Assembly: GCA_029953675.1 (NCBI GenBank)
Contig: JAMWBK010000005.1
Coordinates: 1,860,001-1,924,000, forward strand
DNA length: 64,000 nt
Source: Rhodosorus marinus CCMP1338
Lineage: Eukaryota > Plantae > Rhodophyta
Direction of reading: 5' to 3'
Part shown: one piece after another, positions 1,630-59,918 of the stretch
Numbering within the stretch: the stretch's first letter is position 1
Layout: each line of letters begins with the position of its first letter
Notes under the pieces: model-generated
What the model was told of the DNA's origin: nothing
The model's input: only the letters and a program-made list of their open reading frames with translations
Databases searched by the model: none
Position numbers and translations under genes: made by a program

Positions 1630-3607
1630 TCATTCTCCCACCTTGGCCGATTCTTCCCCATTCTGATCGCCCCGAAAGGTCGAGTTGATCGCGACCTCCT
1701 TGGAACAGCGCTCCAGGGCCAGCTCCAGCAGGCGATGATTCCTAATCTGTTCCAGCTTACTGAACGTCTGAATTTCGGCAGCGGCACTGGACCGCGCAGT
1801 ATACTCCACTGTGGGATTCACGTACAATCCTAGCAGGTCCTCTAAGCCGAGCTCGGGGGTTATCGTCACGTCACCCTCATAGGGCTGGACAAAAATCGGG
1901 AACAACGCGCGAACAATACCCGGGACGCATCCCAGTTGCGTAAGTTGCCAGTATCGGAACTTAATCTCAGCTTTAAGCAAACTAGCGACACGTGTTTGTA
2001 GAATCCAGCTGTTCCTCAGGAGAACGAAATGTGCATTCACTTGGCTCACGATGAAGTGGTTCACGTTGAAAAGCTCTCCCAGACGTGCCAATGGCACATC
2101 CGCTCGTATGGATCCATCAGCCCACTGTGAGCCGTGTGGATGAACCGCAATTTTTACCCCGCTTACAGATCGACTGTAAAGCTCCACTGGAGCAAAAACT
2201 CCCGGAAGGGCACAAGAAGCAGTCACAGCACTCCACACAAGCACATTAGGGGCCGTCAGGTAGTTCAAGAGAAGCGGAGCTTCCGATCCCTTGGACGGTG
2301 TCACCGTGATGTTCAGAATTCGCCCAGAACGTTTGAAAGCCTCGGCGAACGTGACATCCCCAAAGAGCGATTCCATATAGCTGGCCAAGTGGTCGATGTC
2401 ATGTAGGTTCCCTGTGCGGAAAACGCGCATCAGCTTTGTGAACAAACTGTCATCACCAAAAAAATCGAACGTAATCGGGTCTCCATTCTCCGGGTGTCGT
2501 ACGCCTTCCCCCTCCAACATTTTAGTCAGGACATGATCGCTGAGCAGCCCGACAAGCGCAGCGACGATCGATCCAGCGGACGTTCCGGAGACTACCATGG
2601 GAAGCAATCGCTGTTTCAGCAGCACGCGGACGACGCCAAGATGGTAGACGCCCATCGAGCCCCCACCAGAGAGCACGAGAGCCGTACGTCCGTAGGCGTG
2701 CCGGGTTTCATTGAAGAAAGTAAGCGCTTCGTGTCCAGGGAGCTCCTCATGCTTCCGCGCAATTTGCTCCAGAAGAAATGCCACCACGTTGATGTAGTCT
2801 TCGACGATCTGTTTCGTGCCCCCCGCCGCACACACAGAATACAACTCTGGACTACTCAAGCCAGCAAACTCGCGTGTCATTCCAGAGCGAATCGAGTAGC
2901 ACAGCCCGCTCGTATCCCCCTCATCGTATAGACGCTTGAATTCCAGAAGACGTTTCCTCAGCAGGTCATAGTCCACACTACCCGATGAGCACTCCTCCTG
3001 TTTCCAGCTGAGATTGCCTTCCACTCTATCCAACTCATGTGCCTGCGTCCTCCATGCTTCGTAAGTTGTGCACTTTGCCTGGTCGCAGAAAAGCGGACAA
3101 GACAAAAACATCAGAAATGAACGATAGCTCCGAAAGCAAAACAGGAATTTTTGACAGAGAGGAACGAGGCAGGCTGGTCTCATAGATGAAGCTCTGGGAC
3201 AAGCAATCGTACTATCCAGTGACTATCCTCCGAGCTGTGAAAACACAACCTACCAGTTTCCATTTTGCCGCGGTCACGCGAAAATACCACCGAATCCAAA
3301 GAATCCATCCGAAAAGGACAAGCACGATTACATCAAGGACTGACGCCAGCAGCGTCTTCCTTTCCGATTCGATCTCGGTTTCCTGACTATCTTCAGGAGA
3401 CATTTTGAGCCATCTCTCAATCGAATCCCTTCGCACGGTAGGATAAACTGTGCTGCCAAAAATTGGCGGTTCTGAAGGGTCATCCAAGGGAGAGCTCTTT
3501 CCAACGAGTAGCTTCCGGACCCCACCTCCTGCTCGGCGTAAAGGAGACTGCGGCATTGGAGCGTACATCAGCGAGGCCCTATGTGGAGCATAATGGTGGG
3601 CCCCCAT
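1630..3607 (-). CDS. SDP1: Patatin-domain triacylglycerol lipase, SDP1/TGL4 family (about 600 aa, 2 exons)
   Basis: Motifs LVLSGGG (oxyanion), SGTSAGS (catalytic Ser), WADGS (catalytic Asp), TYEAW...LD, ILNITV, PNVLVWSAVTASCA, NHFIVSQVN. An in-frame GT..AG intron at 3253-3079 joins an upstream exon with a hydrophobic segment (from ATG 3607, MGAHH; start uncertain) to the 1630-3078 exon. Confidence 0.9.
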
Positions 3608-12945: not shown

Positions 12946-14917
12946 ATGTCTGGAGAAATTTGTTTTCTGGGCTTGGGGCTTCGCGGAGGCTCAGGTCTCC
13001 GACGTGACCGGCAACCTGAGAGAAGGGAGCGATGGCGCCGAGGGTTGTGCGTTGCTGCATCACGAAAAGGTTCAAAGAAGAAAAGGGACGGAACTGGCCT
13101 GAATGGCAGCGATGGTGAACCCGTATTGAAGGATTTGGATGTGGTATTATGTCATATGCAAGCAGACTATGACACGCTCGCGGCAGCGGTAGGACTGGCA
13201 AAACTCTGGGGCAATGAAGCTGTGGTTGTTCTGTCCGGGGGCTCAAACCCAGCAGTCGAAAGGTTTTTAGGGCTGTTCCGTCCGATGTTTCCTATTAGGT
13301 CCGGGCGCAGCATAGATCCTCGCAGGATTCGGCGCATTGGGGTTGTTGACACGGTTAGGCGGGATAGGCTGGGCTCTTGTGCGGACTGGACCATTGGTGC
13401 GCACTCTGTGGAGGTAATAGACCACCATGTGGGTTCTGCATCAGATTCTGACCGGCAGGGTCGTTCTGCAAGCGAAGAACAATGTGACATATACAATGAT
13501 AGAGGAGCGATCACGCTGATACGGGAGAGAGTCGGGGCGGCAACAACCATGATTGTGGAGAGACTCATGGACTCTCAATGGCGGCTCACTCCAGGAGAAG
13601 CCACGCTGATGGCCCTTGGAATACACACGGACACTGGCTCGCTAACCTTTGAGAACACCACCGCGAGGGACGCAAAAGCCCTGGCGTGGTTGCTTGAACA
13701 GGGTGCAAACCAATCGAGTGTGGCAGAATTCAAGACACCGCAGCTGAATCAGGATCAGATGGACGTGCTTAACCATGGTCTCCAAAAAGTTGAAAAAATA
13801 CCAACGAATGGAGTGATGTTGGGCTACTGCCTTATAGAAACGGAGGATTTCGTCAAGGGCCTCTCCGTTGTTGCACAGGATGTCATGCAACTTAGCAATA
13901 TTGATATTCTGATTTTCTGCGTCGTTAACTATGTGAAGTCTCGAAACGGGAAAGTCAAGGAGGAGGACGGGCGTGTTCGTCGTCAGATATCGCTGATTGG
14001 GCGCGCACGTCCGCGAGTTGACGACCGGGTTAACTTGAACGAAGTCTTTAGCGCGCTCGGCGGAGGTGGCCATCCGAAAGCTGCTGCGGTGACAATACGC
14101 ACCGACGAGGATCCTGCTGAGGTACGTTGATTGGCGGTTCTAGCTTTTGCTTTTGCTTTTGCCTTTGCCCGCGTTGGAGTTTGCAAGCGTCTAAAAGTGC
14201 TTGCCATTAATGGCCAGTTTCCTTGGCGAATATCTGGTTGCCTGGACCCCTTAAGATTTGTGGCGGGCTCCCGTGGGTTCTTCGTTCTCATCTTTTGTTT
14301 TACGATTTCTTGTGCAGATATTGGAGGAGGTGGTTGAGTCCATCCGTGAGCAAATCCCTGAGGAGAAGATGACGAAGGACTTCATGTCGACGGATATAGT
14401 GGTCTGTCGGCCTGACGACCTCATTTCTGAAGCACAGGAGCTCATGTACAGTCACTGCTTGAGTGGCCTGCCAGTGGTGGATGCAGAGAACGAGTTGGTA
14501 GGGACAGTGCTCCAGTCGGACGCCTGGACTGCAGAAAAACAAAACCGGCTGGATGAAAAGATTTCGCACTTCATGCGACGGGGTTCTCATGTGGTAACCA
14601 TCAGCCCAGAAACTACGCTCCCGGAGGTGGAGAGGATATTGGCGCTAGGCAAGGCTGGCCCGTTGCCTGTGCTTAGTGATGGGCAAATTGTGGGTGTGGT
14701 TACCAGAATTGACATCCTCCGTGCGCGGCACCTTTGGAGCCCGGATGATGGAGATGGAGATGATGAGCCTATTCTTCAAGTAGACTCTGTCAAAGAGCTA
14801 CACGAAGCCACCACTCCCCCAGACGTTGCTGGAGATGAGCCTATTATTCAAATAGACCCTGTCAAAGAGCTACATGAAAGCAACACTCCCCCGGACGTTG
14901 TTGCTTCTTCTAACTAG
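12946..14917 (+). CDS. DHH/DHHA1 phosphoesterase with tandem CBS domains, probably plastid-targeted, 591 aa, 2 exons
   Basis: HMQADYD, VVDT, IDHH, GIHTDTGSL and GGGGHPKAAA (DHHA1) motifs, then two CBS repeats (DFMSTDIVVC..GLPVVD; FMRRG..GPLPVL..GVVTRIDIL). Phase-0 intron GTACGT..TGCAG at 14122-14317. Arg/Ser/Gly-rich N-terminal extension. Confidence 0.85.
14762..14905 (+). repeat. Imperfect 72-bp tandem duplication in a coding C-terminus
   Basis: Units 14762-14833 and 14834-14905 encode DEPILQVDSVKELHEATTPPDVAG and DEPIIQIDPVKELHESNTPPDVVA. Confidence 0.9.
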
Positions 14918-15711: not shown

Positions 15712-18316
15712 TCTTATTTCCTTCGCAAAATATAACCTACAATACCCTCTCTCTTACAGCTTATCTCTCGAATAGAGCCTCCTATATACCTACACGTCCC
15801 TCCTCAACAACCTCACGCCTCACCAGTTTCCCCGACGAGACTGCGTGCGCATTTAACTGTTTTCCCAACAGACCTAATCTTCCCCAAAAAAACCGTCTTG
15901 GCCCAAAAACAATATTCCCCAATTCAGTCCAATAGAAAAGTTGACTGAGCTTTATCCACCAGATTTTTTAACCCCTCTACTACAAATCGTTGAATACTCA
16001 ATTATTGAATAATATAAATAAAACATGAATATGTATCCAATCATTCAAATTATATTTCACCACCCCCACCCCTCCCCGCTCCCCAGAATCGAAAAGCCTT
16101 CCTATCAAGTTTGAGAGGCTTCGGGAGCCTCCGACCCAAATCCGTCTCTTGGATTTTGGAAGTTCATCGCATTCGTCTCTAAATTAACCTTTATCAAGAC
16201 CATAAAAATCGAAGAATTAAATGGTTAAAATTAGATATTGGTCCGCACTAGAACTAAATTTGGGGAGTCGATTCTAGTTTGGATATTTTTAGTTTTTACC
16301 AGTGGGCGGGGGTTTCCTCGTAAGATACACTTTCAGATCACATGTTTTTGAAGCAATTTGACGGATTTGTTTGATTCGACGATATCTTGGAGGGGGGAGG
16401 GTTAGTAGTCGGGGAGGAGGACTTGTATCCCTATAGGCTTCATCTAAACTTTTAATTAGCGTCAAGAGCCGCTGTTGTCGGCTGTTGTTGTTTTTTTGTT
16501 CTTTTTCGGTTGAAAGCGGGAGTGAAAGGACAGAAGGTGTTCGTGCGGCGTTTCGATGTAGATGGCAAATTTATCTGCGGATGGTTTAGTTTTGATGGAA
16601 AGGGAGTCTGGTGATTGGAGAGGGAAGGGTTGGGAGGTGGATCTTTTCCTGCTCTGGTTTCCCAAACGGTGTATTTGATGAGAAAGCACTGCAACGTTTA
16701 GGAAGATCTTTTTCGTTTTGCACGTGCGAAGCGTCACTTCGAGTGGGATTCCTGTGGATGCAGGACACCATGCTGTGTGTCTGTTTTTCTTGCGGTAGCA
16801 ATGGTGTGGAAGCCCTCAGGGAGAAGTGAGCGGACCGCCACTGGTTTTGCTTCCTTTTGTTACCAGACTGGTCGGCTCCTTACCGACGCACGAAACTGTA
16901 CTTGGGCCGGGCTTCGCAGTCGTCTAAAGAGCTCCACAAATCCACCTGATCATATGAGATCGTATGTCAAACGTGTTGGAGCCGGCACTGAAACTACACT
17001 CCCCCTTCCTGTTAGAACTTGCGATGCGCCGAATGGGTCGAGCCGCGCAATTGATCAGAGAAGAACCAATAGTCCTACATCTCGTGCATGACCGGGGGGC
17101 GCTGTCATTCGTTGAGGACGTGCAATGCTAATAGTGTGGGCTCCGAGTTGCTCCGGACTGATACAGGAGGTGCTCCCCGAATATGCCCATGCTTCTGAGA
17201 GGTCGTCTTCAGTCTCAACGTGCAGCTAAGAGCAGCGGGTAGCCCCTATCTTCGCTGAAGAGACCTAGGTTACTTGTGCTGGTGCAATACCTCTAGTCAA
17301 TTTCAAGCCTAAGCATCCGCTGAACGACATCTCGAAAACACTGGCGCGAAGATCGAAAAACTCTGAAATCTCTATCATCGCGCGTGCTCGGCACGTTCCA
17401 CATTTCTGAAACTCCCACGCGCTCCTAGTTCTCCAGAGGTTTCACCTAGCTCAACCAGCCCCTCGATAACGCTTGCTTGAAGGCAGATTGGAAACCAGTA
17501 AATCTAGATTGGGTGGCCCTATTCCGCCTATAGTAAGTACTCATCTGACCCGTTTCACAAATCGAGTATCAACATCAACAGGTCAAGAGGTAGCTTTCTC
17601 TCACACAGTCCGAGCCCAAAGCAGTCAGACGGAACTGCGCAGAGTGCTGCTACTAGATCTTAGCCAACATCCGAATCCTGTCTGTTTCTAAGAAGACCCT
17701 AGGCCTGGGTTATCACATTCAGAGTCGATGACCTTCGTGACCTCACCAACCCTCCTTCCCGCCAAACAAGAATTTCCGTTGGTGACCCTACATCGCCCTT
17801 CGGGCAATAGATGAAGTGGTAGTTTCGTCTAAGGCCGGGTAACCGAACGTTGTGATATCAGCCGCGGGATTTGAAAAGCGCGAGCATGCCAATCGGGCTG
17901 CCTTTCTCTGCGTTGTAGGGACTTGTATCACTGCTCATCGAGTGGGTATAAACTGCTCCATCGAACACGTATTCAACGAGGTCACACCAAGCTCTTGAGT
18001 GATGAACCATCCCAAAGGACAATGAGAAGAAGATAACAAGTCGAACGAGAAGAACTGGGAAAAGTAGATATCAGGAATTGAATAAAGCGGTTCCCAAACG
18101 AACTCGAAACGAGTGAAGCCATTGACACTGTCCCAAACTCGGATTGAGGGCTTGGACTCCGTTGAGGGGGTGTTAGTCCCAAGTCATCACATAGTATTGC
18201 TTCTGATGATGAGGAGGTCAAGGACGCTGTGGATTGCTAGCGCAGAAGTTGGGTTTTAGGGAGTTTGATATGTAGCCGTACAGTCCGATGTACTCGTTAA
18301 GTTTCGTCGTGAGCGG

Positions 18317-19346
18317 ATGGATAAGACTAAACGTCGACACAAGAAGCCTCGAGCTAGGGAAACGGAAGAGATGTAGGGTGCGGGTATCTGCTGAGCGAGG
18401 AATGCTCCGTCACACGATAGATAGTCTCGAGGGCGCTATGCATGAACCTGTCGCGAGATCTAGTGGTGTTCCTCAAGCGTCTAGTTTAGGTTCCGCCGTG
18501 GTCTGGTTGACGATGATGTCCTTTGCGCTGTTTTTCTGCTACGATGCCCTTAACAGGTGAGCTTGGAGAGCCTCACACACTAGTGTGGATGGGAGCTGCT
18601 ACAGTTTTGTCACCTGCCACGCGTTCGCATTTCGTCGAACAGGTACCAACGAGAACGGAAATACTTCGAGTCGCTTCGCGAGGCAAAAGCCGGCATTGCC
18701 AAATCAAACTCGACGTTGGAGGACGAACGGGGAGGACTTGAGGAACGAATCCGGTCCATGCAGAACGCGAAAGGCCGGACTACAGAAACTTTGAGACTTA
18801 CCCGGCAAATCCTCAAAGTTGCTGAGGCAGACATTGTTAGCTTGCAGTCTAACCTCGCAAAGATAGAGGATGAGCTCAGTCAAACACTGGATACGATTGA
18901 CCAGGTCGATGCATCTTACTACGATGTAAGCCAGTCGTCAGTCGCCATTTCGATTGAGCCGCCTCTGATAATCGACCTGTGATACCTTCTCAAAACCAAC
19001 TCCAGGAGCTCGAGGAAGAGATTCAGAAAGTCAAGGATGAAACTGAACAGGAGCAAATGGCGCTCGATGAGAAGGTGAACACTTCAGCGTTGGAAGCAAA
19101 CATGACGTTGAGTATGAAGGATGATATTCTCCGAGAAGTTTCGCAAGCTGAGCAAGACTTCCTGTACTCAGTGAAGGTGAGAACCCAAATGAAAGTAGCT
19201 CTTGAGCGGTGCATCTTTTCATCTCCACCCGTCCAACGAATCTAACGCTGATTCATTTCCATATCTGGGTCCAGAGAAAGGTTGAACTCTACGCACGACT
19301 ACTCAGGACGATAGAAGCAGAGCAGGACTATTTACCCTCAGTGTAG
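18317..19346 (+). CDS. Type II membrane protein with long coiled coil, 237 aa, 5 exons
   Basis: Exons 18317-18372, 18425-18556, 18643-18925, 19006-19176 and 19275-19346 (714 nt, all GT..AG) give one open frame: basic N-terminus, TM AVVWLTMMSFALFFCY, then heptad-rich Glu/Lys/Leu sequence. Start codon uncertain. Confidence 0.7.
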
Positions 19347-19902: not shown

Positions 19903-20909
19903 TCAGATGAGCTCTACCTTGAGCTGTCCTCTCGGTACAAGCTGCTCCTCACCCAAAAGCCGTGTTGAATCTTCTTGCGTGTAGGTTTTCCTCGGATACT
20001 GAGAGAGAAGCTTGAAACCCTGTCGAGCCACCTCGGGTCGTTGTTCTGCAATCTCCTCCCAGACTTTCCCAAGCGAATCCGAACCGTTCACTGGGAGTTC
20101 CATGTTTATTCCATCTGGCATCCTGAGAAGCAGTTTGCCACTTGGGAGAACAAACAGAAGGAAGCAACAACTTTAGGAAACCTCACAAGGAAGGAAACGG
20201 GATAGTTCTCGAGTGGAGAGAATGATAACGCTTACCTCAACGAGGCGATATCTGGAGTTGCTTTGGGCTTCGCGTCAGTGGCCTCAACGCCGTTGTCCTG
20301 ATCGCTCATGGCTGCCAACTGGTCAACAGCAGAGCCAAGAGACTCATTGCCAGTTGCTGTGAGCGCCGCCTCGGATTGAGCTTTTCCGAATCCCAGTTCG
20401 AGAAGTTGTTGCAGCAACGCCTGGTCCGGCTCAACAGATTTCTTTGCAGGTACCTGGCTTGGCTTCTCCTTCGCGACAGGGGCCTTAGGTTTGGATGGTT
20501 GGACTATGTTCGCATCCGAATTGGGAGAGGCCTGTGTGGTTGCTCCCCCAAGCCTACGCCCTGCGCCCTCGAAAGCTGCTGTTCGAGGCGCATAAGATTG
20601 GATGGCCGACTCCACTCTTCCTATGTTTGCACCCACGATTTCTTCTACTCGCCTCCCTTTTGAATACACGTGAAACGTGGGCATAGCCTTAATTCCACAG
20701 TGTCGAGCAACGTCCTTGGCCCTATCCACGTCCACTTTTGCAAAAACTCCCACGTCCGCATACTTTCTCGAAAGCTGCTCAACTTGCGGGGCCACCGCAC
20801 GGCATGGGCCGCACCATGTGGCAAAAAAGTCCACAACAACAACCCTCGGACCAGCTCTCGACAAGAGAGCGTCAAACTCTGTCATCGAACCAACATCAAC
20901 AATCCCCAT
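19903..20909 (-). CDS. Thioredoxin-SHP box-UBA-UBX fusion protein, 297 aa, 2 exons
   Basis: VVVDFFATWCGPC...GIKAMPTF (thioredoxin), FEGAGRRLGG (SHP box), LLQQLLELGFGKAQSEAALTATGNESLGSAVDQL (UBA), and LRMPDG...FKLLSQYPRKTY...LVPRGQL (UBX). The intron GTAAGC..CTCAG at 20235-20123 joins the two ORFs in frame. Confidence 0.85.
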
Positions 20910-21494
20910 CTTGCTCGTTCAGAACGCTGCCTTTCACCCAAACCGTTGTGTATCACACAACCCCCAAAAACAGCAAATAAAAAAAGCAAACCTCCCCCAA
21001 ACAAAGCCGAACCAGAGCGGCTCGTCCAGATATACTTTCGAACTTCAACCTGATCACTAGAAGAGCTTCATGTAATCAGCCGAAGACCAATACAGCAGGC
21101 GACAACACACCACATCCTCAACACCAACTTCCGATCCTCCATATCTCTCTTCTATCATAGTATCCACCAATGACAGATATCTCAAAAAAGGTTTCCACTA
21201 AGGGTGGAGGCGGTTTCCAACTGTTCCAGCCCATTTGCGAGACATCGGTAATTCATCCCGGTCCAACTGTGAGCTCATGATGATGAGGATATAGATTAGT
21301 TCTAGAGGCGAACCACTACGAGAAGGCTAGGCTGTGAGCGCACACACGTCGAGTGTGTGGGTTGACGTTAATTGGTCCTGCTCGACGAATGTTGTGGAAG
21401 GTGAAAATCTGTTGGGACTAGGGCTCACGCACGGAGATATGCCTTCCGCCCGAGCGCGTGTTGCGTTTCGAAGCACTGGATGATATTCGTATCG

Positions 21495-25531: not shown

Positions 25532-28451
25532 TCATACAGTCTTGTATGCCACCGAACTCGGAACAAATGGAGTCGCCTCCAGATTCCAAATTTGTTCTCC
25601 GTATTCACGAATGGTACGATCAGATGAGAACTTGCCCATCCTCGCGACGCTCGTAATCGTCTTCTTCACCCAGCTGGTCTGGTTCTTGTACTCCTCATCA
25701 ACTCTGGCTTGAGCATCCATGTATGACGAAAAGTCGCGCGTAACAAGGTAGTAATCGTTGTAAGGCTGCAAGTTCTTCAGCAGAGGTTCCGAGACATCCT
25801 TCCCGCAGTATTTATTTGCCTCGATCTGCTTCATCGCTTCCTGCAACCGGCTGTCAGTGTGCTGATAGCCTCCATACTTGAGCTCATTACGCGCACGGTC
25901 GATCTGTTGCGTGATAGAGACGGAGAAGAGCGTCAGTGTGAGATCTACATCAACCTCGTGTGAAGAAAAATGAACAATCCAGTCTCACCTCTTCCTCGAG
26001 CAGTCCGAAGATGAACATGTTGTCGTTTCCAATTTCCTCGCGGATTTCGATATTTGCGCCGTCCATGGTACCAATGATCAACCCTCCATTCATTACGAAC
26101 TTCATGTTCGAAGTTCCTGATGCCTCCATTCCAGCTGTAGAAATATGCTGCGAAATATCATTGGCGGGGATGATATCCTCTGCAAGCGTCACGTTGTAGT
26201 TGGTCATGAAGAAGACCTTGAGCAGGTCTCCGACATCCTTGTCGTTGTTGACCACCTTGGATACACCGTTGATCAGACGAATGATATGCTTCGCGATAAC
26301 ATATCCAGCAGCGGCCTTTCCACCAATAATGCACACACGGGGAACGCATTCCTCCTTTTCAGCGGGGGTCATTCGCTTGATAGCGTTGTACCGGCAGATG
26401 ATTGAGAGTACGTTCATAAGCTGTCGCTTGTACTCGTGAATACGCTTGACCTGAATATCGAACATGGCGTCAGTGCTAACTTCAACCCCAAATTCTTTCT
26501 TGATCCGCTCAGCAACACGCTTCTTGTTAGTGCGCTTCGCCTCGCGGAACTCGCGCTGCATATCAGCGCTATCAACAAACTGCTCTAGGCCGCGGCACAG
26601 TTCATAGTTGGAAACCCACTCGTCAGTCTCCAGCCATCGGGAGATAACCTCAGACAGGGCCGGGTTGGCACTCTGCATCCACCGACGGGGGGTAACTCCG
26701 TTGGTCATGTTCAAGAACTTATCGGGCTGCTCCTTGTAGAAATCTGGGAACAACCTGGACTTGACGAGCCCAGAATGAATCGCAGCGACACCGTTTACGT
26801 GGTGGGAACCGACCACAGCAAGCACTGCCATACGAACCATCTTCGGGAAGCCCTCCTCGATGATGCTCATTCTCATCAGCTTGTCACCATCGCCAGGGTA
26901 CTTCTTCACCACCTCCTCCAGGTGACGTCTGTTGATTTCGTAGATAATTTGCATATGTCTCGGCAGCAGCTTCTCCACGAGGTCCACAGACCACCTCTCC
27001 AGAGCCTCCGGGAGGACGGTGTGGTTCGTGTAAGAGAACACCTTCGTTGTGGTTGCCCAGGCGGCACTCCAACCCATACTCTCGTGGTCCATGAAAATCC
27101 TCATCAGCTCTGCAATTCCGATAGTTGGGTGAGTGTCATTCAACTGGATTGCAACCTTAGTATGCAGCTCGGTGAGCGGCCTATCCTTCTTCTTGAAACG
27201 TCGAACGACGTCCTGAAGGGTTGCAGATACGAAGAAGTGCTGCTGCTTCAAACGCAGTTCCTTGCCCGCCTCAGTCGCATCGTTAGGATACAGAACAGAC
27301 GAGATCTTTTCAGCTGCCTCCTTCGACGCAACCGCAGAGTAGTAGTCTCCTCGAGAGAAAGAGTCGAGGTCAAACTCAGATGCAGGTGTTGCGGACCACA
27401 ACCGAAGGTTCAGAGTGTTGTACGTGTCGTATCCCGGAATAGGTGAGTCATACGCAATTGCGGTCACGACCTCCCCGCCCTGCCACTCGTAATGCTTTCC
27501 GTTGTGCTTGATCTCTCCATAGAACCTGACCGGATACTTCACGTCCAGACGTTCAATCTCCCAAGGGTTGCCTGCCGTCAGCCAATAGTCCGGAATCTCA
27601 ATCTGGTACCCCTCCTTAGAGATCCTCTGTTCGAACATGCCGTACTTGTAGCGAATACCGTAGCCCCAAGCTGGATAGTTGATGGTTGCGAGAGAGTCCA
27701 TGAAGCATGCGGCGAGTCTGCCAAGACCTCCATTTCCGAGACCCGGATCCCTCTCCTGGTGCTCAACCTCATCAAGGTCGAAACCGAGCTTCTTCAGAGC
27801 TCCTTGGTACTGGCTCTCAATTCCCAGATTGAGAAGAGCGTTATTCAAGTACCTCCCCATCAAGAATTCCATGGAAAGATAGTAGACACGCTTCACATCC
27901 TTCTCGGTGAAGTACTGTTGCGTGTCGTTCCAGGACTCGATCAAACGATCGCGAACGGAGTAGGCGGTGGCCTGATAGGCATGCTGCTCGTCAAAGTTGT
28001 ACTTCGTCCTTGCAAGCGTGTACTCTACATGGTTCACGATCTGCTTCAAGATAGAGTCCACGTCTGGCGGATGAATTACATGACGAAGGAAAGAAGGAGA
28101 CTACGCTCAGGAGCGGACTCTCACAACTGTGAAAAATTTCTGCAACGATCGCCTTACCGCGTGGCAGATACTGAGTCATGATATTGTGGATAATCTTATC
28201 CTTCTCACTAACCTCCACAGCAGCATCCTGTGGTGTAGTGTGGCCAGTGGCCGTCGCATGATAACGAGCCTCGGGCGCGGAAACCTTCCCCGCCGCTGAT
28301 CAAAGCAAAAACAGAGGCAAGGAACGAAGCGTCAGCATCAACGAGAGCCGTCTTCACAAATTCAAAACGCCCATTCCCCAAAGTCCGGCGTTTTCCGATC
28401 ACATCGTAGCTTACCCAAATCTTGGAATGACGCTGTCCTCTTCCCCTGCAT
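25532..28451 (-). CDS. PHO: Cytosolic alpha-glucan (starch/glycogen) phosphorylase, 873 aa, 4 exons
   Basis: [47 protein letters not shown] (PLP lysine) and [12 protein letters not shown]. Exons 28451-28415, 28295-28158, 28063-25989 and 25903-25532 total 2622 nt. No transit peptide. Confidence 0.96.
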
Positions 28452-36425: not shown

Positions 36426-37830
36426 ATGGCAGTAGGATTGAAGGGTGATCGGCTGAGGCTTTTGTTGGACATTGTGGAGAATGAAGATGAGCCGCTTAGC
36501 AGTTTGAGCGCGCGGTTTGCGAGAGAGTACGCGGGAGAGGCCGAACTGGTGGCTTCCGGGGTTGTGCTGGCCAGTCTTGTTCAGGATGGTCTCCTTCGCA
36601 GAAGCTCACAGATAGTTACAGCCATGTATCTCCTGAACGAACTCAGCCAGTTGCGACCAAGTGGATCAGATTTGTCTCCGTATACGGGCGTGCTCATCGA
36701 GACCTTCGACGAACCTCTCAGAAGCGAGGAAGATCGCCTATTTCTCTCCCTACTTATAGAATCCAATCTGGTATGTATTTATTATCTAGGCATGAGTCAT
36801 GGAAACACTGGATCATGATCAAAACAAGCTTCTGACCGCAGCTGCCCATCTACTGCAGGCCTCCAGGCAGACGCTTCAGCAACTTCGAGGAAGGACGTCG
36901 GCACAAGTCTCAAAGCTGCTCGCAGATGAAATTGCGAAAGGCCGGACTGCTTCGGAATCACCCGGGCAGACCGAACTAAGAGTTCAGTGGAAGGCCGTCT
37001 GCGAAGGAAGTCGGAAGGAGGATGGCATAATGCCAGTTTCCGGAGTCATTGGCTTAGGAGTTGAGGACTCCTTTGGGAGCAAATCCAGTCTCAGGGATCT
37101 ACTCGGAGACGAAGTGATGACGATAGACATGGTTCCCAAATTTGCGAGACCAGTGCCTCCACTAATGCCGGTGTCGGAAGGTGAACTGCGGTGGATGGAC
37201 CCCGAGGCTTATCACGAGGTGATATGGGATACAACCATGTCTCTGGAGCCCGATCGGGGTGCCGAGCTAAGAGAATTAATATCAAAGGCGCTTCGATCTC
37301 CGCTTCAGCCGGCACAGCAGAGACAAGTCGAGGTGCAACTGAGAAGCGATCCCGGACTTGTTCACTGTTGTGGACTAACCCCTAAAAAGCTGCCTGATTT
37401 GGTGGAGAAGAATCCGCACGTTGCCGTTATGGTTTTGCTTAAGCTCGTCTCCTCACGGCAAATGCCACAGTACCTGTCGACTCTGGTCAACATGGACCTC
37501 AGTTTGCATTCCATGGAGGTAGTCAACGCCGTTACCACTGCGGTGGAGCTCCCACAAGAGTACGTTCACAAGTACATTTCCAAGAGCATTCTTCGGTGTG
37601 GCAACATCGAGGACAAGTACATGCAGAACCGAGTAGTGAGGCTCGTGTGCGTGTTCCTCATGAATCTCATCAAGAACAACATTATCAGCGTGGAAGGGAG
37701 CTTGTTCGTCGAGGTGCAAACATTCTGCGTGGAGTTTAGCCGGATAAGAGAAGCCGCCGATTTGTTCCGGCTTTTGAAGAATGTTAACCAGAACAATGCG
37801 GGGTATATGGGACACATTCAACTCTCGTAG
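36426..37830 (+). CDS. CNOT11: CCR4-NOT complex subunit 11, 438 aa, 2 exons
   Basis: C-terminal LTPKKLPDLVEKNP...SLHSMEVVN...DKYMQNRVVRLVCVFL..LI...FVEVQTFCVEFSRIREAADLFRLLK is the conserved CNOT11 region. Phase-0 intron GTATGT..TGCAG at 36771-36858. Confidence 0.92.
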
Positions 37831-51485: not shown

Positions 51486-54400
51486 ATGTCGCCTCCACTG
51501 AAGCGAAGTGGAGGCCTGTCAGTTTCACCTGAGAGATCTCATAGCTCGTCGTCAGCACTATCGTCTCACGGAGCGACGTCGGACAAGTTTCTAGGGACAA
51601 AAAAACAGAGACTAGAGGGAGTTACTCCTCAGAGAAAATCACAAAAGCCGATTAACAGAGGTGCAGGCTCTTCTTCGTCGTCAACGAGCTTCCAGCGCCA
51701 AATTTCGAGAGGCATGGAGTCTCCTGGGAGCAGGATGGGGCAGAATCCTGCTCAAGCTCGAACCTCATCAAAGAAGCTCCTGATTCGTCCGTTCTCAACA
51801 CCACCTCAGATGCCTGATGAGTACTTTAACCAAACCTGGGAGAACGAGCTGCTCGGTGCAATTCGAGCGATCCAGGACAAGCAGCCTGTGAGATTCTCGT
51901 ACGAGGAGCTGTACCGAAAGGTTGAGGATCTCTGCCGGGGGAATAAAACGACGCAGCTGGTCGCCAAGCTCGAGGCCGAGTGCGAGAAACACATCGCTAA
52001 GCAGTTAAAGGATCTGGAGGATTCAACCCTATCTCAAGAAGACTTTCTCGCTTCGATCGATCGAATCTGGGAGGACTATTTCAGCGAACTCTTGACGATC
52101 AGGAGCATCTTCCTGTTTCTCGACAGAAAGTACGTGATCCACACTACCTATGAGAAGAACCTCTTCGATATGGGAGTTCAGGTATTTGTGAAACGATTCA
52201 CTGCAAGCACCAAGGTCATGGACACCTCTATCAAGGGGATTGTATCGCTAATTGACAAGGTAGGCACTGCTGGCTGGAAGCCAGGCTTTGAATTTCCGCT
52301 CTATGCGGGTCTGAGCCGCTTCTATCAGGACTTTGACAAATGTTTAAGAGCTTTGCGCATACTTTGTGTGATGGATGTGACTAGGATCGTATGGGAGAAG
52401 TCATTGACAAGTCCCTCTTCAAGAGGCTCCTGACCATGTTCGCTTCCACCAAGTTGAATACGTCGCAGCTGGAGCAGAGCATTCTCACCGTTTCGACTGA
52501 CTACTTCCGCGTGAAATCCCTGGAGAACCTCCAAGAAAATGATATTGTTACTTATTTGAGGTGGGAGGACGGAAAAAGCATTTTTACAGGGCGGCTGAAG
52601 CAATGGAGTATGTATCACGTGTCTAACGAAGAGTGACCTTCGTTCTTGTTTGTTCACGCGTCGCTGCCGGTCGATGAGTAGATATGTTGAACGACAAATG
52701 TCGCTGGAGTCGGAAAGAATCTCCTGCTTGCACCAGTCTACACGGAGGGCTCTCAGCGTGGTTTTGGAGAAGAATCTTCTAGTTAACCACTTGTCGTCAA
52801 TACTTGCAAAGGGCTTTGATCAGCTATGCGACGAAACCAGGGTTGAGGACCTCAAGCTCTTGAATAGGCTCTTTGGAGTGGCGGACTTGCACGACGGGTG
52901 CGAGGCTTATTCCATGTTGCGAGATAGTTTCGGGGAGTATGTAAGGGAGAAGGTCGACCAGATCGTGTCGAATCCGGAGCAGGTATGAAGGTCCACCTCG
53001 AGCAGCACAAGGCAATGTCTTTTGCGTAAGCCCGAAGGCTGTTTATACCTGATTCCCATGTCAATCCCTGGCCTGATCCCATAGGACGATTCCATGGTCC
53101 CAAATTTGCTGGACTTTATGGAGAAAAGAAAGGTGCTATGCGAAGAGGCGTTTGAGAACAACGAGGCCATCGCAGACTTCTCGAAACAGACTATGGAGAA
53201 GCAAATCAACAAGCGGCCGAACAAGCCTGCGGAGTACGTCGCGAAGCACATAGACCACATTCTCAAGGCCGGCAACAAGAAGTACAGCGAGGACGAGCTA
53301 ACATCTACACTTGACAAGCTGATTGTCCTGTTCAGGCGCATTCAAGGGAAAGATATCTTCGAAGCGTACGTTTTCCAGACAAGGAATTAGCTCTTAGGGA
53401 CAACTTATCATGGTCGCGGGGTCCCTATGTTAGGGCTGAAGGAAAGGGTCCTTCTGACACCAGTTCTCAACTCAACCTCTTGGGTGTTGTTTCTGTTATC
53501 TGCTCAGGTTCTACGAAAGGGACCTTGCAAAGAGGTTGTTATTTGACCGTTCAGCTTCCCTAGATTTGGAAAATAGCATGATATCGAAACTTAAAGTGGA
53601 ATGTGGGGCGTCATTCACGCGAAAGTTGGAGGGAATGTTCAAAGACGTCGATTTGTCGACTGATATTATGCACTCATTCAGAGAAAATCGTCGATCAGCC
53701 GGCGCGTTGGGCGATATCGAGCTGAAGGTGGATTCTTTCTTCAAGCCCGCTTCGCCCGTTCTGCGCCATGCTGTCTGTGTCTACCCCGCTCACAATCTTT
53801 GACCGGCTTGCGTGCTCGTGCAGGTCAACGTACTAACGACAGGTTTTTGGCCTAGCATGGCGAAGGAGGAGCTGAAGTTGCCGCGAGAGTTGAATGACTG
53901 TCAGGAGACTTTCACGACGTTTTATTTGGAGAGCCATAAATCGTAAGAAGCTCACCACGCAACTTCACTTTTGTTCTCAGCAGACGAATTGAGTGGATCA
54001 TGAGTCTGATCTAGCGCCCGGTCTCATTCTGCGGTGGTTCTGCTCCGCTTTGGAATGCTTTAGGAGGGTCCTCCGATGGCAGTATGGCAATGGCTCGTGC
54101 GTGTTATCGGCGACGTTTCCTAAAAGACGACACTTGCTGTCCGTCTCTCTGTACCAGACTCTGATCTTGCTGCTGTTTAATAAGGTCGAAACCCTGACGT
54201 ACAAGGAAATTCTCGCTGCTACGGGGCTCAGCGAGTCGGAATTGAAAAGAGCGCTCCTGTCCTTAGCATGTGGAAGACATAGAGTGATATTGAAGCAACC
54301 CAAGGGAAAAGTGGTTGACGAGGATGACTCCTTTGTTTATAACAGTGGATTCGAAAAGCCACTAGTTCACCTCAAGGTATTTGAGCAATAGAAACGCTAC

Positions 54401-58836: not shown

Positions 58837-59918
58837 ATGGGAACTAGGAAGAAAACCCTAGAGTCGCTGTGGAAGACGTTTGAAGGAGTTGGCTGCTACA
58901 GGCCGAATTTGTCGAAAGTGCCGTTTTTCCTTTTCTGCGGACCGAATGTCGTGGAGTCCACAGATCACTTGCTACGAGTTGGTTCGGAAGTCAAATCGAT
59001 CGCCACCAAGCTCGGGCTTCCATGGATCTTGAAGAGCAGCTTCGACAAGGCAAACAGGACGTCCCCGTCTTCTTTCAGAAGTATTGGATTTGAACCAGCT
59101 CTTGCCACTTTGAGAGAAGCTCGACGGGTGCTGAACGTGCCCATTGTCACCGACATCCACGAATCGGTACTGACTGAAGCATCTCCAAAACGAGCCAGTG
59201 TTTTATGTCTCAATCTACCAGGCCGGTGATCTCTAAACTGGGAATGCTCTCCGTCTTCTTCCTCTCTTTTCTACATGATCGAACTACACGTCGACGGCCA
59301 TCCACCTCTGCGGATCTAAACGGATCAAAACCAACCTCCTTCATTGGAATGGAATGGCGACAGTGGCAAGCTGAACCTGTATCCCAAGTGGCTGATATCC
59401 TCCAGATCCCTGCGTTTCTTTGTCGCCAGACAGATTTGCTTGAGGCGGCAGCGCGTACTGGAAAAGTGGTGATGATCAAGAAGGGGCAATTTGCTTCAGC
59501 GGAAGTCATGCGAGGAGCTGTGGCAAAGCTCCACGTGGTTGGTGGGAGCACAGCGATTGTCTGTGAGAGGGGCAACAGCTTTGGCTATGGGGATCTCGTA
59601 GTCGATTTTCGGAACTTGGATCGACTGAGAGCGGCAACTGACGCCTTAATTGCGTTCGATGCATCACACTCCGCTCAGCAACCTCCATCGTCGCTTACCG
59701 AGAGCTCCGTCAGTAGCGGGAGTTCCGAGGATGCGCTTCTTCTCGCCCGAGCTGCTGTAGCCGTCGGGATCGATGCGCTGTTCCTGGAAGTACACGACAA
59801 CCCCCAACAAGCACCGGTCGAGCGATGCACGCAGCTCAAGGTTGATAAGCTCGAACCCTTGCTCAGTGAGCTCATTTCTGTGGCAAGGGCAACGGGCAGG
59901 TTGTTGCCTGATCCATGA
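58837..59918 (+). CDS. kdsA: 3-deoxy-D-manno-octulosonate 8-phosphate (KDO8P) synthase, 294 aa, 2 exons
   Basis: GPNVVES, KSSFDKANRTS, TDIHES, ADILQIPAFLCRQTDLL, IKKGQF, CERGNSFGY, DASHSAQQP and FLEVHDNP. Phase-0 intron at 59167-59363. Confidence 0.92.

What the first reader, a model, noticed from the sequence alone, without database searches (positions are those of the whole stretch)
19903..20909. Catalytic thioredoxin fused to a complete p97/Cdc48 adaptor (Trx-SHP-UBA-UBX)
Seen: splicing two ORFs at 20235-20123 gives one 297-aa protein with an intact WCGPC thioredoxin, an FEGAGRRLGG SHP box, a UBA domain (LGF loop) and a UBX domain (YPR loop). Known: UBXN1-type adaptors are UBA-UBX; FAF1/UBXD7/UBXD8 carry only a redox-inactive thioredoxin-like UAS domain; Txnl1 is Trx-PITH. 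Inference: this protein could bind ubiquitinated clients and p97 through two sites while reducing client disulfides, i.e. a redox-coupled extraction adaptor. I do not recognise this four-part architecture from characterised proteins.
Basis: partly seen in the sequence, partly recalled or inferred. Interest (0 to 1): 0.75.

Follow-up and report, generated by a model that had tools for sequence, protein, structure and literature searches.

The report
Thioredoxin fused to a Cdc48/p97 adaptor
A red-alga gene really does encode an apparently active thioredoxin joined to three modules predicted to dock onto ubiquitin and the Cdc48/p97 unfolding machine. The layout is old and widespread in eukaryotes outside the usual model organisms, and I found no study of it.

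Summary
The minus-strand gene at 20909..19903 encodes thioredoxin (WCGPC), an SHP box (FEGAGRRLGG), a UBA domain and a UBX domain. All three domains score above Pfam's curated cut-offs and fold confidently in AlphaFold2.

A Rhodosorus transcript contig and two transcript-derived proteins show the intron is 20235..20141, giving 303 aa rather than 297. The six restored residues form strand 1 of the UBX domain.

The window is nuclear DNA of a Rhodosorus-like red alga. The protein is not a one-off. Trx-SHP-UBA-UBX occurs in four red-algal classes, glaucophytes and Amoebozoa. Trx-SHP-UBX without UBA occurs in early-diverging fungi and the charophyte Closterium. At least 81 clusters at 50% identity carry Trx plus UBX.

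The UBA-coiled-coil-UBX body of the longer orthologues matches metazoan UBXN1/SAKS1 over nearly its full length.

Full-text searches found no paper on this architecture.

Most likely function (inferred, not shown): an accessory Cdc48 cofactor that holds a disulfide reductase at the Cdc48 N-domain. This would parallel TXNL1 on the proteasome.

It is a new variant of a known kind, of moderate interest.

The parts
20236..20909 (-). CDS exon 1 (aa 1-224 plus two bases of codon 225). It encodes the thioredoxin domain, the SHP box, a linker and the UBA domain. The start ATG is at 20909-20907.
   Evidence: ORF list, sequence and translation. Transcript contig L001 aligns without a gap to window 21460-20236.
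20141..20235 (-). Intron of 95 nt, GTAAGC...pyrimidine tract...CCCAAG.
   Evidence: L001 cDNA junction. P0001 and P0002 read ASLSGKLLLRMPDG. P0003 (225 aa, ending ASLR) matches the unspliced form.
19903..20140 (-). CDS exon 2 (third base of codon 225, aa 226-303, stop TGA at 19905-19903). It encodes the UBX domain.
   Evidence: Pfam UBX covers aa 227-300.
20586..20909 (-). Thioredoxin domain, aa 1-108. It is of the cytosolic Trx1 / h type.
   Evidence: Pfam PF00085, E 9e-25. PDB phmmer: 45-49% identity-range hits to catalytic thioredoxins, E down to 3e-29. AF2 pLDDT 93-97. Foldseek TM 0.9-0.97 and rmsd about 1 A to human Trx1 and Chlamydomonas Trx h1.
20802..20816 (-). Catalytic motif W32-C33-G34-P35-C36.
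   Evidence: Sequence. W32, C33, P35 and C36 are invariant and G34 nearly invariant across 32 family members, as are D27 (buried Asp) and P77 (cis-Pro).
20544..20573 (-). SHP box F113-E-G-A-G-R-R-L-G-G122. It starts about 5 residues after the last thioredoxin helix.
   Evidence: Matches the consensus F-x-G-x-G-x-x-h (PMC8181520). It lies in a disordered linker with pLDDT below 50. It is a conservation island: F 0.8, G 0.8, G 1.0, L 1.0, G 0.8, against 0.2-0.3 in the flanks. The motif is present in 54 of 81 Trx+UBX representatives and 3 of 57 Trx-only hits, Fisher p = 4e-14.
20295..20432 (-). UBA domain, aa 160-205: a three-helix bundle with an L172-G-F174 loop.
   Evidence: Pfam UBA_7 E 4e-9 and UBA E 8e-5, both above cut-off. 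AF2 helices 163-171, 176-186 and 191-204, pLDDT 93-96. The best PDB match is 1WHC, the UBA of UBXN1/SAKS1.
19906..20140 (-). UBX domain, aa 225-303 (codon 225 spans the intron). R231 lies in strand 1.
   Evidence: Pfam PF00789 E 5e-8. AF2 gives a beta-grasp fold with pLDDT 88-97. It aligns to the FAF1 UBX domain of p97-N complexes. R231 and P274 are invariant in the family.
19990..19998 (-). Y273-P274-R275, the counterpart of the FPR loop that UBX domains insert into the Nn/Nc cleft of the p97 N-domain.
   Evidence: Sequence. It aligns to FPR of FAF1. [FY]P[RK] is present in most family members.

Best explanation
The gene encodes an accessory cofactor of the Cdc48/p97 unfoldase of the UBXN1/SAKS1 (UBA-UBX) type. 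It also carries, at its N-terminus, a catalytically competent cytosolic-type thioredoxin followed directly by an SHP box.

Proposed mechanism:
- The UBX domain (R231 and the YPR loop) docks into the Nn/Nc cleft of a Cdc48 N-domain.
- The SHP box binds the outer face of the Nc lobe of the same or a neighbouring N-domain. Only about 5 residues separate it from the thioredoxin fold, so it would pin the reductase onto the N-domain ring at the substrate-entry side.
- The UBA holds the ubiquitin chain of the client.
- The thioredoxin then reduces intra- or intermolecular disulfides in oxidised or cross-linked ubiquitinated clients, so they can be unfolded and threaded. NADPH-thioredoxin reductase would recycle it.
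- This would be the Cdc48 counterpart of TXNL1 (Trx-PITH) on the 26S proteasome.

Shown here: gene structure, expression in relatives, domain identities, predicted folds, motif conservation, and homology of the long orthologues to UBXN1.

Inferred: Cdc48 binding, ubiquitin binding, reductase activity and the nature of the thiol substrate.
For: - Domain calls are all above Pfam cut-offs.
- The thioredoxin catalytic set is complete and conserved: WCGPC, D27 and cis-Pro77.
- AlphaFold2 gives three confident domains joined by disordered linkers.
- The SHP motif is a conserved island in the linker and is tied statistically to the presence of UBX.
- The UBX p97-contact signature, R in strand 1 plus [FY]PR, is conserved.
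- The UBA is closest to the UBXN1 UBA, 1WHC.
- The Chondrus orthologue's UBA-coiled-coil-UBX body matches metazoan UBXN1 over 93-95% of the query at 36-40% identity, E 1e-30 to 1e-44.
- The fusion is maintained across red-algal classes, glaucophytes and Amoebozoa, and in fungi and Closterium without the UBA.
- Catalytic thioredoxin is also fused to two other Cdc48-binding modules in other lineages: PUL in Emiliania huxleyi and PUB in another eukaryote and in diatom sPUB. This points to a Trx-Cdc48 link (PMC3101018).
- TXNL1 precedent: the authors propose co-degradational reduction of substrates at an unfoldase entrance (PMC12700817).
- UBXN1 is one of the UBA-UBX proteins discussed with p97-UFD1-NPL4 (PMC9377798, title, abstract and term counts only).
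Against: - No biochemical datum exists for any member.
- The cytosol is reducing, so disulfide-bonded clients may be rare.
- Animals, Dikarya and land plants apparently do without the fusion. This rests on my recollection of characterised UBX proteins (yeast Ubx1-7 and the human set) and on the PUX review's description of Arabidopsis PUX domains (PMC8181520).
- The F225 and N233 contacts of the Ufd1 SHP box are not conserved here (T110, R118).
- The SHP motif is degenerate in a minority of members, for example Bangiopsis and Purpureofilum (MGPGHRLG) and Galdieria.
- The Rhodosorus protein lacks the coiled-coil of UBXN1.
- Several family members appear to lack a recognisable CxxC, although some are N-terminally truncated models.
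Confidence: 0.5

Rival explanations
1. The anatomy and docking are the same, but the thiol substrate is Cdc48 itself. The tethered thioredoxin would keep redox-sensitive Cdc48 cysteines reduced, or reset them after oxidative stress. Candidates are the conserved N-domain Cys (yeast Cys115 / human Cys105) and oxidation-prone ATPase-domain cysteines. The protein would then be a dedicated repair or regulatory factor for the ATPase.
For: - The SHP box lies only about 5 residues after the Trx fold, so the active site would sit on the N-domain Nc lobe (SHP site in PMC5042407).
- Yeast Cdc48 Cys115 lies in the N-domain near the UBX-binding region and is reversibly oxidised (bioRxiv 10.1101/733709).
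- Trx1-3 associate with Cdc48 in stationary phase (PMC12137173).
- In Arabidopsis the thioredoxin-family protein NRX1 interacts with and reduces oxidised CDC48A (PMC13616930).
- The fungal and Closterium members lack the UBA. Ubiquitin-client capture is therefore not essential to the conserved core Trx-SHP-UBX.
Against: - The UBA is retained across red algae, glaucophytes and Amoebozoa, which suggests ubiquitinated clients matter.
- Free cytosolic thioredoxin could do this job.
- Whether the Rhodosorus Cdc48 has the relevant cysteine was not examined; its gene is not in the window.
Confidence: 0.27
2. The thioredoxin acts as a redox sensor or a redox-independent holdase rather than a turnover reductase. 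Oxidation of the CxxC, or of C71, would change the adaptor's conformation, SHP accessibility or client binding, and so switch Cdc48 targeting under oxidative stress. Alternatively the Trx fold simply chaperones unfolded clients.
For: - TXNL1 has an ATP- and redox-independent chaperone activity in addition to its reductase activity (PMC10570131, title and abstract).
- UBXN1 in animals is largely a regulatory or inhibitory cofactor (my recollection of the UBXN1/SAKS1 literature; PMC10897191 abstract).
- A few family representatives show no recognisable CxxC.
Against: - WCGPC, the buried Asp and the cis-Pro are invariant or nearly so in 32 diverse members. At least 67 of 81 representatives keep WC[GPA]PC, and a looser pattern finds an active-site motif in about 70 of 81. 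That level of conservation is what catalysis predicts.
Confidence: 0.13
3. The four-part protein is an annotation artefact. A thioredoxin gene and a separate UBA-UBX or UBX gene lie side by side and were joined only on paper.
For: The UBX is on a separate exon, and one transcript-derived ORF (P0003, 225 aa) stops in the intron.
Against: - Trx, SHP and UBA share one uninterrupted 225-codon ORF.
- A transcript contig and two transcript-derived proteins span the junction in frame.
- The same fusion occurs in dozens of independent genomes and transcriptomes.
Confidence: 0.02

Closest known systems
UBXN1 / SAKS1 (metazoan UBA-coiled-coil-UBX cofactor of p97)
   Same: - The UBA is of the same subtype; the best PDB match is 1WHC.
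- The UBX is C-terminal.
- The longer red-algal orthologues (Chondrus, 467 aa) align to UBXN1 over 93-95% of their UBA-to-UBX body at 36-40% identity.
   Different: - UBXN1, as I recall it and as its hit lengths of 270-300 aa imply, starts at the UBA. It has no thioredoxin, and from memory no SHP box.
- The Rhodosorus protein has lost the central coiled-coil.
p47 / Shp1 (UBA-SEP-SHP-UBX)
   Same: Bipartite binding to the Cdc48 N-domain through an SHP box plus a UBX domain, combined with a ubiquitin-binding UBA (PMC8181520; PMC5042407).
   Different: - There is no SEP domain.
- The SHP box lies upstream of the UBA, directly after a thioredoxin.
- The thioredoxin has no counterpart in p47.
FAF1 / UBXD7 / UBXD8 (UBA-UAS-UBX)
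   Same: A UBA-UBX cofactor that also contains a thioredoxin-fold domain.
   Different: - The UAS domain lacks CxxC and lies between UBA and UBX (PMC8181520).
- Here the domain is a canonical PF00085 thioredoxin with WCGPC, placed at the N-terminus.
- No UAS hit appeared in Pfam.
TXNL1 / TRP32 (Trx-PITH, 26S proteasome cofactor)
   Same: A catalytic thioredoxin tethered through a docking module to an AAA+ protein-unfolding machine. Its authors propose that it reduces substrates co-translocationally (PMC12700817; PMC12700798).
   Different: - The docking module is PITH, which binds Rpn11/Rpn2/Rpn10 of the proteasome, not SHP/UBX on Cdc48.
- TXNL1 has no ubiquitin-binding domain.
- Trx-PITH proteins among the hits lack the SHP motif.
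Diatom sPUB (thioredoxin + PUB domain, periplastidal compartment)
   Same: A thioredoxin fused to a Cdc48-binding module. It has been proposed as a redox regulator of sCdc48 (PMC3101018; PMC12412216).
   Different: - PUB binds the Cdc48 C-terminal tail, not the N-domain.
- Its thioredoxin is reported as YbbN-like (PMC12412216).
- It is restricted to stramenopiles and chromerids, is targeted to the periplastidal compartment, and has no UBA or SHP.

Membership tests
UBX-domain cofactors of Cdc48/p97 | A UBX domain (Pfam PF00789) with a beta-grasp fold | tested here: met
   PF00789 E 5e-8, 33.4 bits against a cut-off of 21. AF2 model aa 225-302 has pLDDT 88-97 with beta-beta-alpha-beta-beta topology.
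UBX-domain cofactors of Cdc48/p97 | The p97-N contact signature: a conserved Arg in strand 1 and an FPR-type loop between strands 3 and 4 | tested here: met
   R231 and Y273-P274-R275 align to the FAF1 UBX Arg and FPR. R231 and P274 are invariant in 32 members.
UBX-domain cofactors of Cdc48/p97 | Physical binding to the Cdc48/p97 N-domain | not testable with these tools
   This needs a pull-down, ITC, or complex modelling with the cognate Cdc48.
UBXN1 / SAKS1 subfamily (UBA-coiled-coil-UBX) | A UBA of the UBXN1 type upstream of a C-terminal UBX | tested here: met
   The best PDB hit for the UBA is 1WHC (UBXN1), for both the window protein (E 7e-4) and the Chondrus orthologue (E 3e-13).
UBXN1 / SAKS1 subfamily (UBA-coiled-coil-UBX) | A central charged coiled-coil between UBA and UBX | tested here: not met
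   The window protein has only a 20-residue disordered linker, aa 205-224. The coiled-coil is present in florideophyte, bangiophyte and Galdieria orthologues.
UBXN1 / SAKS1 subfamily (UBA-coiled-coil-UBX) | Near-full-length sequence homology to metazoan UBXN1 | tested here: inconclusive
   Met for the orthologue P0012 (93-95% coverage, E to 1e-44). The window protein is linked only through that orthologue family (45-49% identity over the Trx region). No phylogeny was built.
Catalytic thioredoxins (Trx1 / h type) | WCGPC active site, buried Asp and cis-Pro in a PF00085 fold | tested here: met
   W32-C-G-P-C36, D27 and P77 are all conserved. PF00085 E 9e-25. Foldseek TM 0.9-0.97 to human Trx1 and Chlamydomonas Trx h1.
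Catalytic thioredoxins (Trx1 / h type) | Disulfide reductase activity, recycled by thioredoxin reductase | not testable with these tools
   This needs an insulin or DTNB assay with NTR and NADPH.
SHP-box (BS1) linear motif | Consensus F-x-G-x-G-x-x-h in a disordered region | tested here: met
   F113-E-G-A-G-R-R-L120 matches the consensus in PMC8181520. It has pLDDT below 50 and is a conservation island. The equivalents of Ufd1 F228, G230, G232 and L235 are kept; those of F225 and N233 are not (PMC5042407).
SHP-box (BS1) linear motif | Binding to the Nc lobe of the p97 N-domain | not testable with these tools
   This needs peptide binding or a co-structure.
UAS-domain UBX proteins (FAF1, UBXD7, UBXD8) | A redox-inactive thioredoxin-like UAS domain between UBA and UBX | tested here: not met
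   No UAS hit was found. The domain is PF00085 with an intact CxxC and is N-terminal.
TXNL1 (Trx-PITH) | A C-terminal PITH domain (PF06201) | tested here: not met
   There is no PITH hit. Trx-PITH proteins form a separate set among the homologues.

The most novel reading that the evidence does not exclude
The catalytic thioredoxin was part of the ancestral eukaryotic UBXN1-type cofactor and was later lost in animals, Dikarya and land plants. Together with the Trx-PUB and Trx-PUL fusions, which look independently evolved, it would reveal a general and so far unrecognised requirement: Cdc48/p97, like the proteasome with TXNL1, works with a dedicated on-board disulfide reductase that reduces cross-linked clients as they are unfolded.
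Probability: 0.3. Interest if true: 0.7.

Novelty: new variant of a known kind. Interest (0 to 1): 0.55.

Why it matters
Cdc48/p97 threads proteins through a narrow pore, and disulfide cross-links are an obvious obstacle to that. How the machine copes with oxidised clients, and how its own redox-sensitive cysteines are reset, are active questions (NRX1-CDC48A in 2026; yeast Cys115; TXNL1 on the proteasome in 2025).

A conserved, natural covalent fusion of an apparently active thioredoxin to two Cdc48 N-domain docking elements is Rosetta-stone-type evidence that the two activities are coupled. It also supplies a ready reagent: a small soluble 303-aa protein for testing substrate reduction against ATPase repair in vitro.

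The family is absent from human and, as far as I recall, from yeast and Arabidopsis. That would explain why it has been overlooked. It also raises the evolutionary question of whether UBXN1 lost a thioredoxin.

Tried and rejected
1. It is in frame, but it is rejected as the main form by the transcript contig and the transcript-derived proteins, and because it deletes UBX strand 1.
2. Foldseek of the whole three-domain model against PDB. It returned only thioredoxin hits. It is useful for the Trx domain but uninformative for UBA and UBX, so sequence matches to PDB were used for those.
3. Literature searches for any paper on a Trx+UBX protein: 'thioredoxin domain' + 'UBX domain', 'SHP box' + thioredoxin, Trx-UBX and similar. 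They returned only omics gene lists, reviews mentioning the UAS fold, and Drosophila Trithorax/Ultrabithorax false positives.
4. UAS-domain and TXNL1 membership. Both were rejected on Pfam evidence.
5. Gene-fusion artefact. Rejected.
6. Genomic context as a functional clue. The neighbours are unrelated housekeeping genes of a eukaryotic nuclear genome: patatin-like lipase, DHH phosphoesterase, alpha-glucan phosphorylase, CNOT11, cullin and DAHP synthase. No link was found.
7. The diatom SELMA sUBX as a descendant of this family. It is not supported: sUBX is reported to belong to the Ubx3/PUX10 group (PMC12412216).
8. Modelling a complex with Cdc48. This was not possible, because the tool predicts single chains only and no Cdc48 gene is in the window.
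Full report
**Gene structure**

The feature lies on the minus strand.
- A 225-codon ORF (20909..20232) begins with ATG and runs into a GTAAGC donor at 20235.
- Two AG acceptors downstream are both in frame with the next ORF. One is at 20142-20141, behind a long pyrimidine tract. The other is at 20124-20123.
The first gives 303 aa.

Evidence from relatives settles the choice.
- The closest database proteins are transcript-derived (MMETSP) sequences of the red alga Rhodosorus marinus. P0001 (303 aa) is 91% identical and P0002 (302 aa) is 92-93% identical.
- Both read ...PDIASLSGKLLLRMPDG....
- P0002 is encoded without interruption on contig L001.
- L001 aligns to window 21460-20236 and then 20142-19274.
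- The intron is therefore 20235..20141 (95 nt) and the product is 303 aa.
- A third transcript-derived ORF, P0003 (225 aa, ending ASLR), corresponds to the unspliced message.

**Domain content**

Pfam calls three domains, all above their curated cut-offs.

| Domain | Residues | E-value |
|---|---|---|
| Thioredoxin | 10-96 | 9e-25 |
| UBA_7 | 162-205 | 4e-9 |
| UBX | 227-300 | 5e-8 |

The 303-aa form scores slightly better for UBX than the 297-aa form: 33.4 against 31.7 bits, and it starts three profile positions earlier.

An AlphaFold2 model built on a 32-sequence family alignment has mean pLDDT 84.
- It shows three confident domains: Trx 1-110, a three-helix UBA 163-204, and a beta-grasp UBX 225-302.
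- Two disordered linkers join them, at 111-157 and 206-220.
- UBX strand 1 is residues 225-231 (SGKLLLR).

The Trx domain superposes on catalytic cytosolic thioredoxins (human Trx1, Chlamydomonas Trx h1) with TM 0.9-0.97 and rmsd about 1 A. It is 40-49% identical to them. W32, C33, P35, C36, the buried D27 and the cis-Pro P77 are invariant across the family. This is a canonical thioredoxin, not a degenerate UAS-like fold.

**The SHP box**

- F113-E-G-A-G-R-R-L-G-G122 fits the published consensus F-x-G-x-G-x-x-h (PMC8181520).
- Compared with the Ufd1 SHP box (FRAFSGSGNRL, PMC5042407), it keeps the equivalents of F228, G230, G232 and L235. It does not keep those of F225 and N233.
- It lies in the disordered linker, only about five residues after the last Trx helix.
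- In the family alignment it is an island of conservation (F 0.8, G 0.8, G 1.0, L 1.0, G 0.8) in a linker otherwise at 0.2-0.3.
- Among the first 120 homologues the motif appears in nearly every UBX-bearing protein. It appears in none of the Trx-PITH, Trx-PUL, PUB-Trx or plain Trx proteins.
- Among the 150 best representatives of an exhaustive profile search, it is present in 54 of 81 Trx+UBX proteins against 3 of 57 Trx-only proteins, Fisher p = 4e-14. A looser pattern raises the first figure.
- This is good comparative evidence for a functional linear motif coupled to the UBX. Binding itself is untested.

**Origin of the window and spread of the family**

The window is nuclear DNA of a Rhodosorus-like stylonematophycean red alga.
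- It is 82-89% identical at the nucleotide level, by aligned piece, to a Rhodosorus transcript contig (taxonomy).
- It has short GT-AG introns.
- Its neighbours are ordinary eukaryotic genes.

The architecture is not unique to it.
- Trx-SHP-UBA-UBX occurs in these red algae: Stylonematophyceae (Rhodosorus, Purpureofilum, Bangiopsis), Florideophyceae (Chondrus, Agarophyton, Gracilaria), Bangiophyceae (Porphyra, Pyropia) and Cyanidiophyceae (Galdieria).
- It also occurs in the glaucophytes Cyanophora and Gloeochaete.
- It also occurs in the Amoebozoa Acanthamoeba, Mastigamoeba (with an extra ZZ finger) and Ceratiomyxa.
- A shorter Trx-SHP-UBX form without UBA occurs in Mortierellomycota, Entomophthora, Basidiobolus and the charophyte Closterium.
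- An exhaustive profile search of 1.84 billion representatives put at least 81 clusters at 50% identity with Trx+UBX among the top 150. Of these, 57 also carry a UBA.
- Deposited names are generic, such as 'thioredoxin domain containing protein', 'thioredoxin, putative' and 'UBX domain-containing protein'.

**Relation to known cofactors**

- The UBA of both the window protein and the Chondrus orthologue is most similar to 1WHC, the UBA of UBXN1/SAKS1.
- The UBA-coiled-coil-UBX body of the Chondrus protein retrieves metazoan UBXN1 over 93-95% of its length at 36-40% identity, E 1e-30 to 1e-44.
- The family is therefore best described as a UBXN1/SAKS1-type cofactor with an added N-terminal Trx+SHP module.
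- The stylonematophycean members, including this one, have lost the central coiled-coil. They are 302-319 aa, against 411-519 aa in other red algae.
- It is not a UAS-type protein (FAF1, UBXD7, UBXD8) and not TXNL1.

**Mechanism**

Shown: a single expressed polypeptide with a catalytically complete thioredoxin, a conserved SHP motif, a UBA, and a UBX carrying the canonical N-domain contact signature.

Inferred from established knowledge of these modules:
- UBX binds the Nn/Nc cleft of the N-domain.
- SHP binds the far face of the Nc lobe, a separate site (PMC5042407).
- UBA binds ubiquitin.

The protein should therefore bind Cdc48 at two sites and hold ubiquitinated clients. The short spacing between Trx and SHP would pin the reductase on the N-domain ring at the substrate-entry side.

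My preferred reading (confidence about 0.5) is that it reduces disulfides in oxidised or cross-linked ubiquitinated clients to allow unfolding. The parallel is TXNL1, whose Trx domain sits near the proteasome's channel entrance and is proposed to reduce substrates co-degradationally (PMC12700817).

The main rival (about 0.27) is that Cdc48 itself is the substrate.
- Yeast Cys115 in the N-domain is reversibly oxidised (bioRxiv 10.1101/733709).
- Thioredoxins join the Cdc48 interactome under oxidative conditions (PMC12137173).
- Arabidopsis NRX1 reduces oxidised CDC48A (PMC13616930).
- The conserved core in fungi and Closterium lacks the UBA, which favours this rival somewhat.

A sensor or holdase role is less likely, given the strict conservation of the catalytic residues. 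A gene-model artefact is excluded.

**Novelty**

Full-text searches found no paper that describes a protein combining a thioredoxin domain with UBX or SHP. The concept does have precedents.
- Diatom sPUB (Trx+PUB) has been proposed as a redox regulator of symbiont Cdc48 (PMC3101018, PMC12412216).
- TXNL1 couples a thioredoxin to the proteasome.
- Among the homologues I also saw catalytic Trx fused to PUL (Emiliania huxleyi) and to UIM-PUB.
- Thioredoxin has thus been joined to three different Cdc48-binding modules. That pattern supports a real Trx-Cdc48 functional link.

I rate this a new variant of a known kind: real, conserved, unstudied and directly testable, but a domain-fusion variant rather than a new principle. 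The interest score is 0.55.

Noticed in passing
window 20232-20909 (-); protein P0003: One Rhodosorus transcriptome holds an intron-retaining ORF (225 aa, ending ASLR). It would give a Trx-SHP-UBA protein without the UBX. It could be unspliced pre-mRNA or a real short isoform that could still dock through the SHP box alone.
   Followed up: partly
window 18204-19274 (+), seen through locus L001 2797-3685: The same transcript contig continues into a convergent neighbour gene with no Pfam hit and a coiled-coil-like ORF at 18979-19245. Alignment gaps suggest three short introns at about 19175-19273, 18925-19005 and 18557-18639. The 3' ends of the two genes abut or overlap closely enough to be assembled into one contig.
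   Followed up: no
proteins P0084 (Emiliania huxleyi), P0099, P0083, found as homologues: Catalytic thioredoxin is also fused to other Cdc48-related modules in other eukaryotes: Trx-PUL, UIM-PUB-Trx, and an AAA ATPase fragment followed by Trx. Many unnamed metagenome hits (ENA, JGI, Logan) are Trx-PUL.
   Followed up: partly
proteins P0025, P0030 (about 275-290 aa) and P0036, P0049 (about 222-230 aa): Mortierellomycota carry two paralogous Trx-SHP-UBX proteins. The longer one has an extra hydrophobic or amphipathic insert between SHP and UBX (for example APYHIRLWTAVGHLSSGILNF...), which might be a membrane or lipid-droplet anchor.
   Followed up: no
window protein and P0004, P0005, compared with P0007-P0020: Stylonematophycean members (302-319 aa) lack the roughly 100-residue charged coiled-coil that other red-algal, glaucophyte and metazoan UBXN1-type proteins have between UBA and UBX. 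Bangiopsis and Purpureofilum have also lost the Phe of the SHP box (MGPGHRLG).
   Followed up: partly
window 1630-3183 (-), 12946-14130 (+), 25950-28061 (-), 36799-37830 (+), 51486-52433 (+), 59205-59918 (+): The long ORFs elsewhere in the window are ordinary eukaryotic genes or exons: patatin-like phospholipase with DUF3336, a weak DHH/DHHA1 phosphoesterase match, alpha-glucan phosphorylase (E 8e-278), CNOT11, a cullin N-terminal part, and a DAHP synthase part. None has an evident link to the finding.
   Followed up: partly
window 20910-21460 (-): The transcript contig L001 aligns without a gap for about 550 nt upstream of the start codon, and a 46-codon ORF was called just upstream in L001. 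This is either a long 5' UTR with a uORF or read-through assembly from the upstream neighbour.
   Followed up: no
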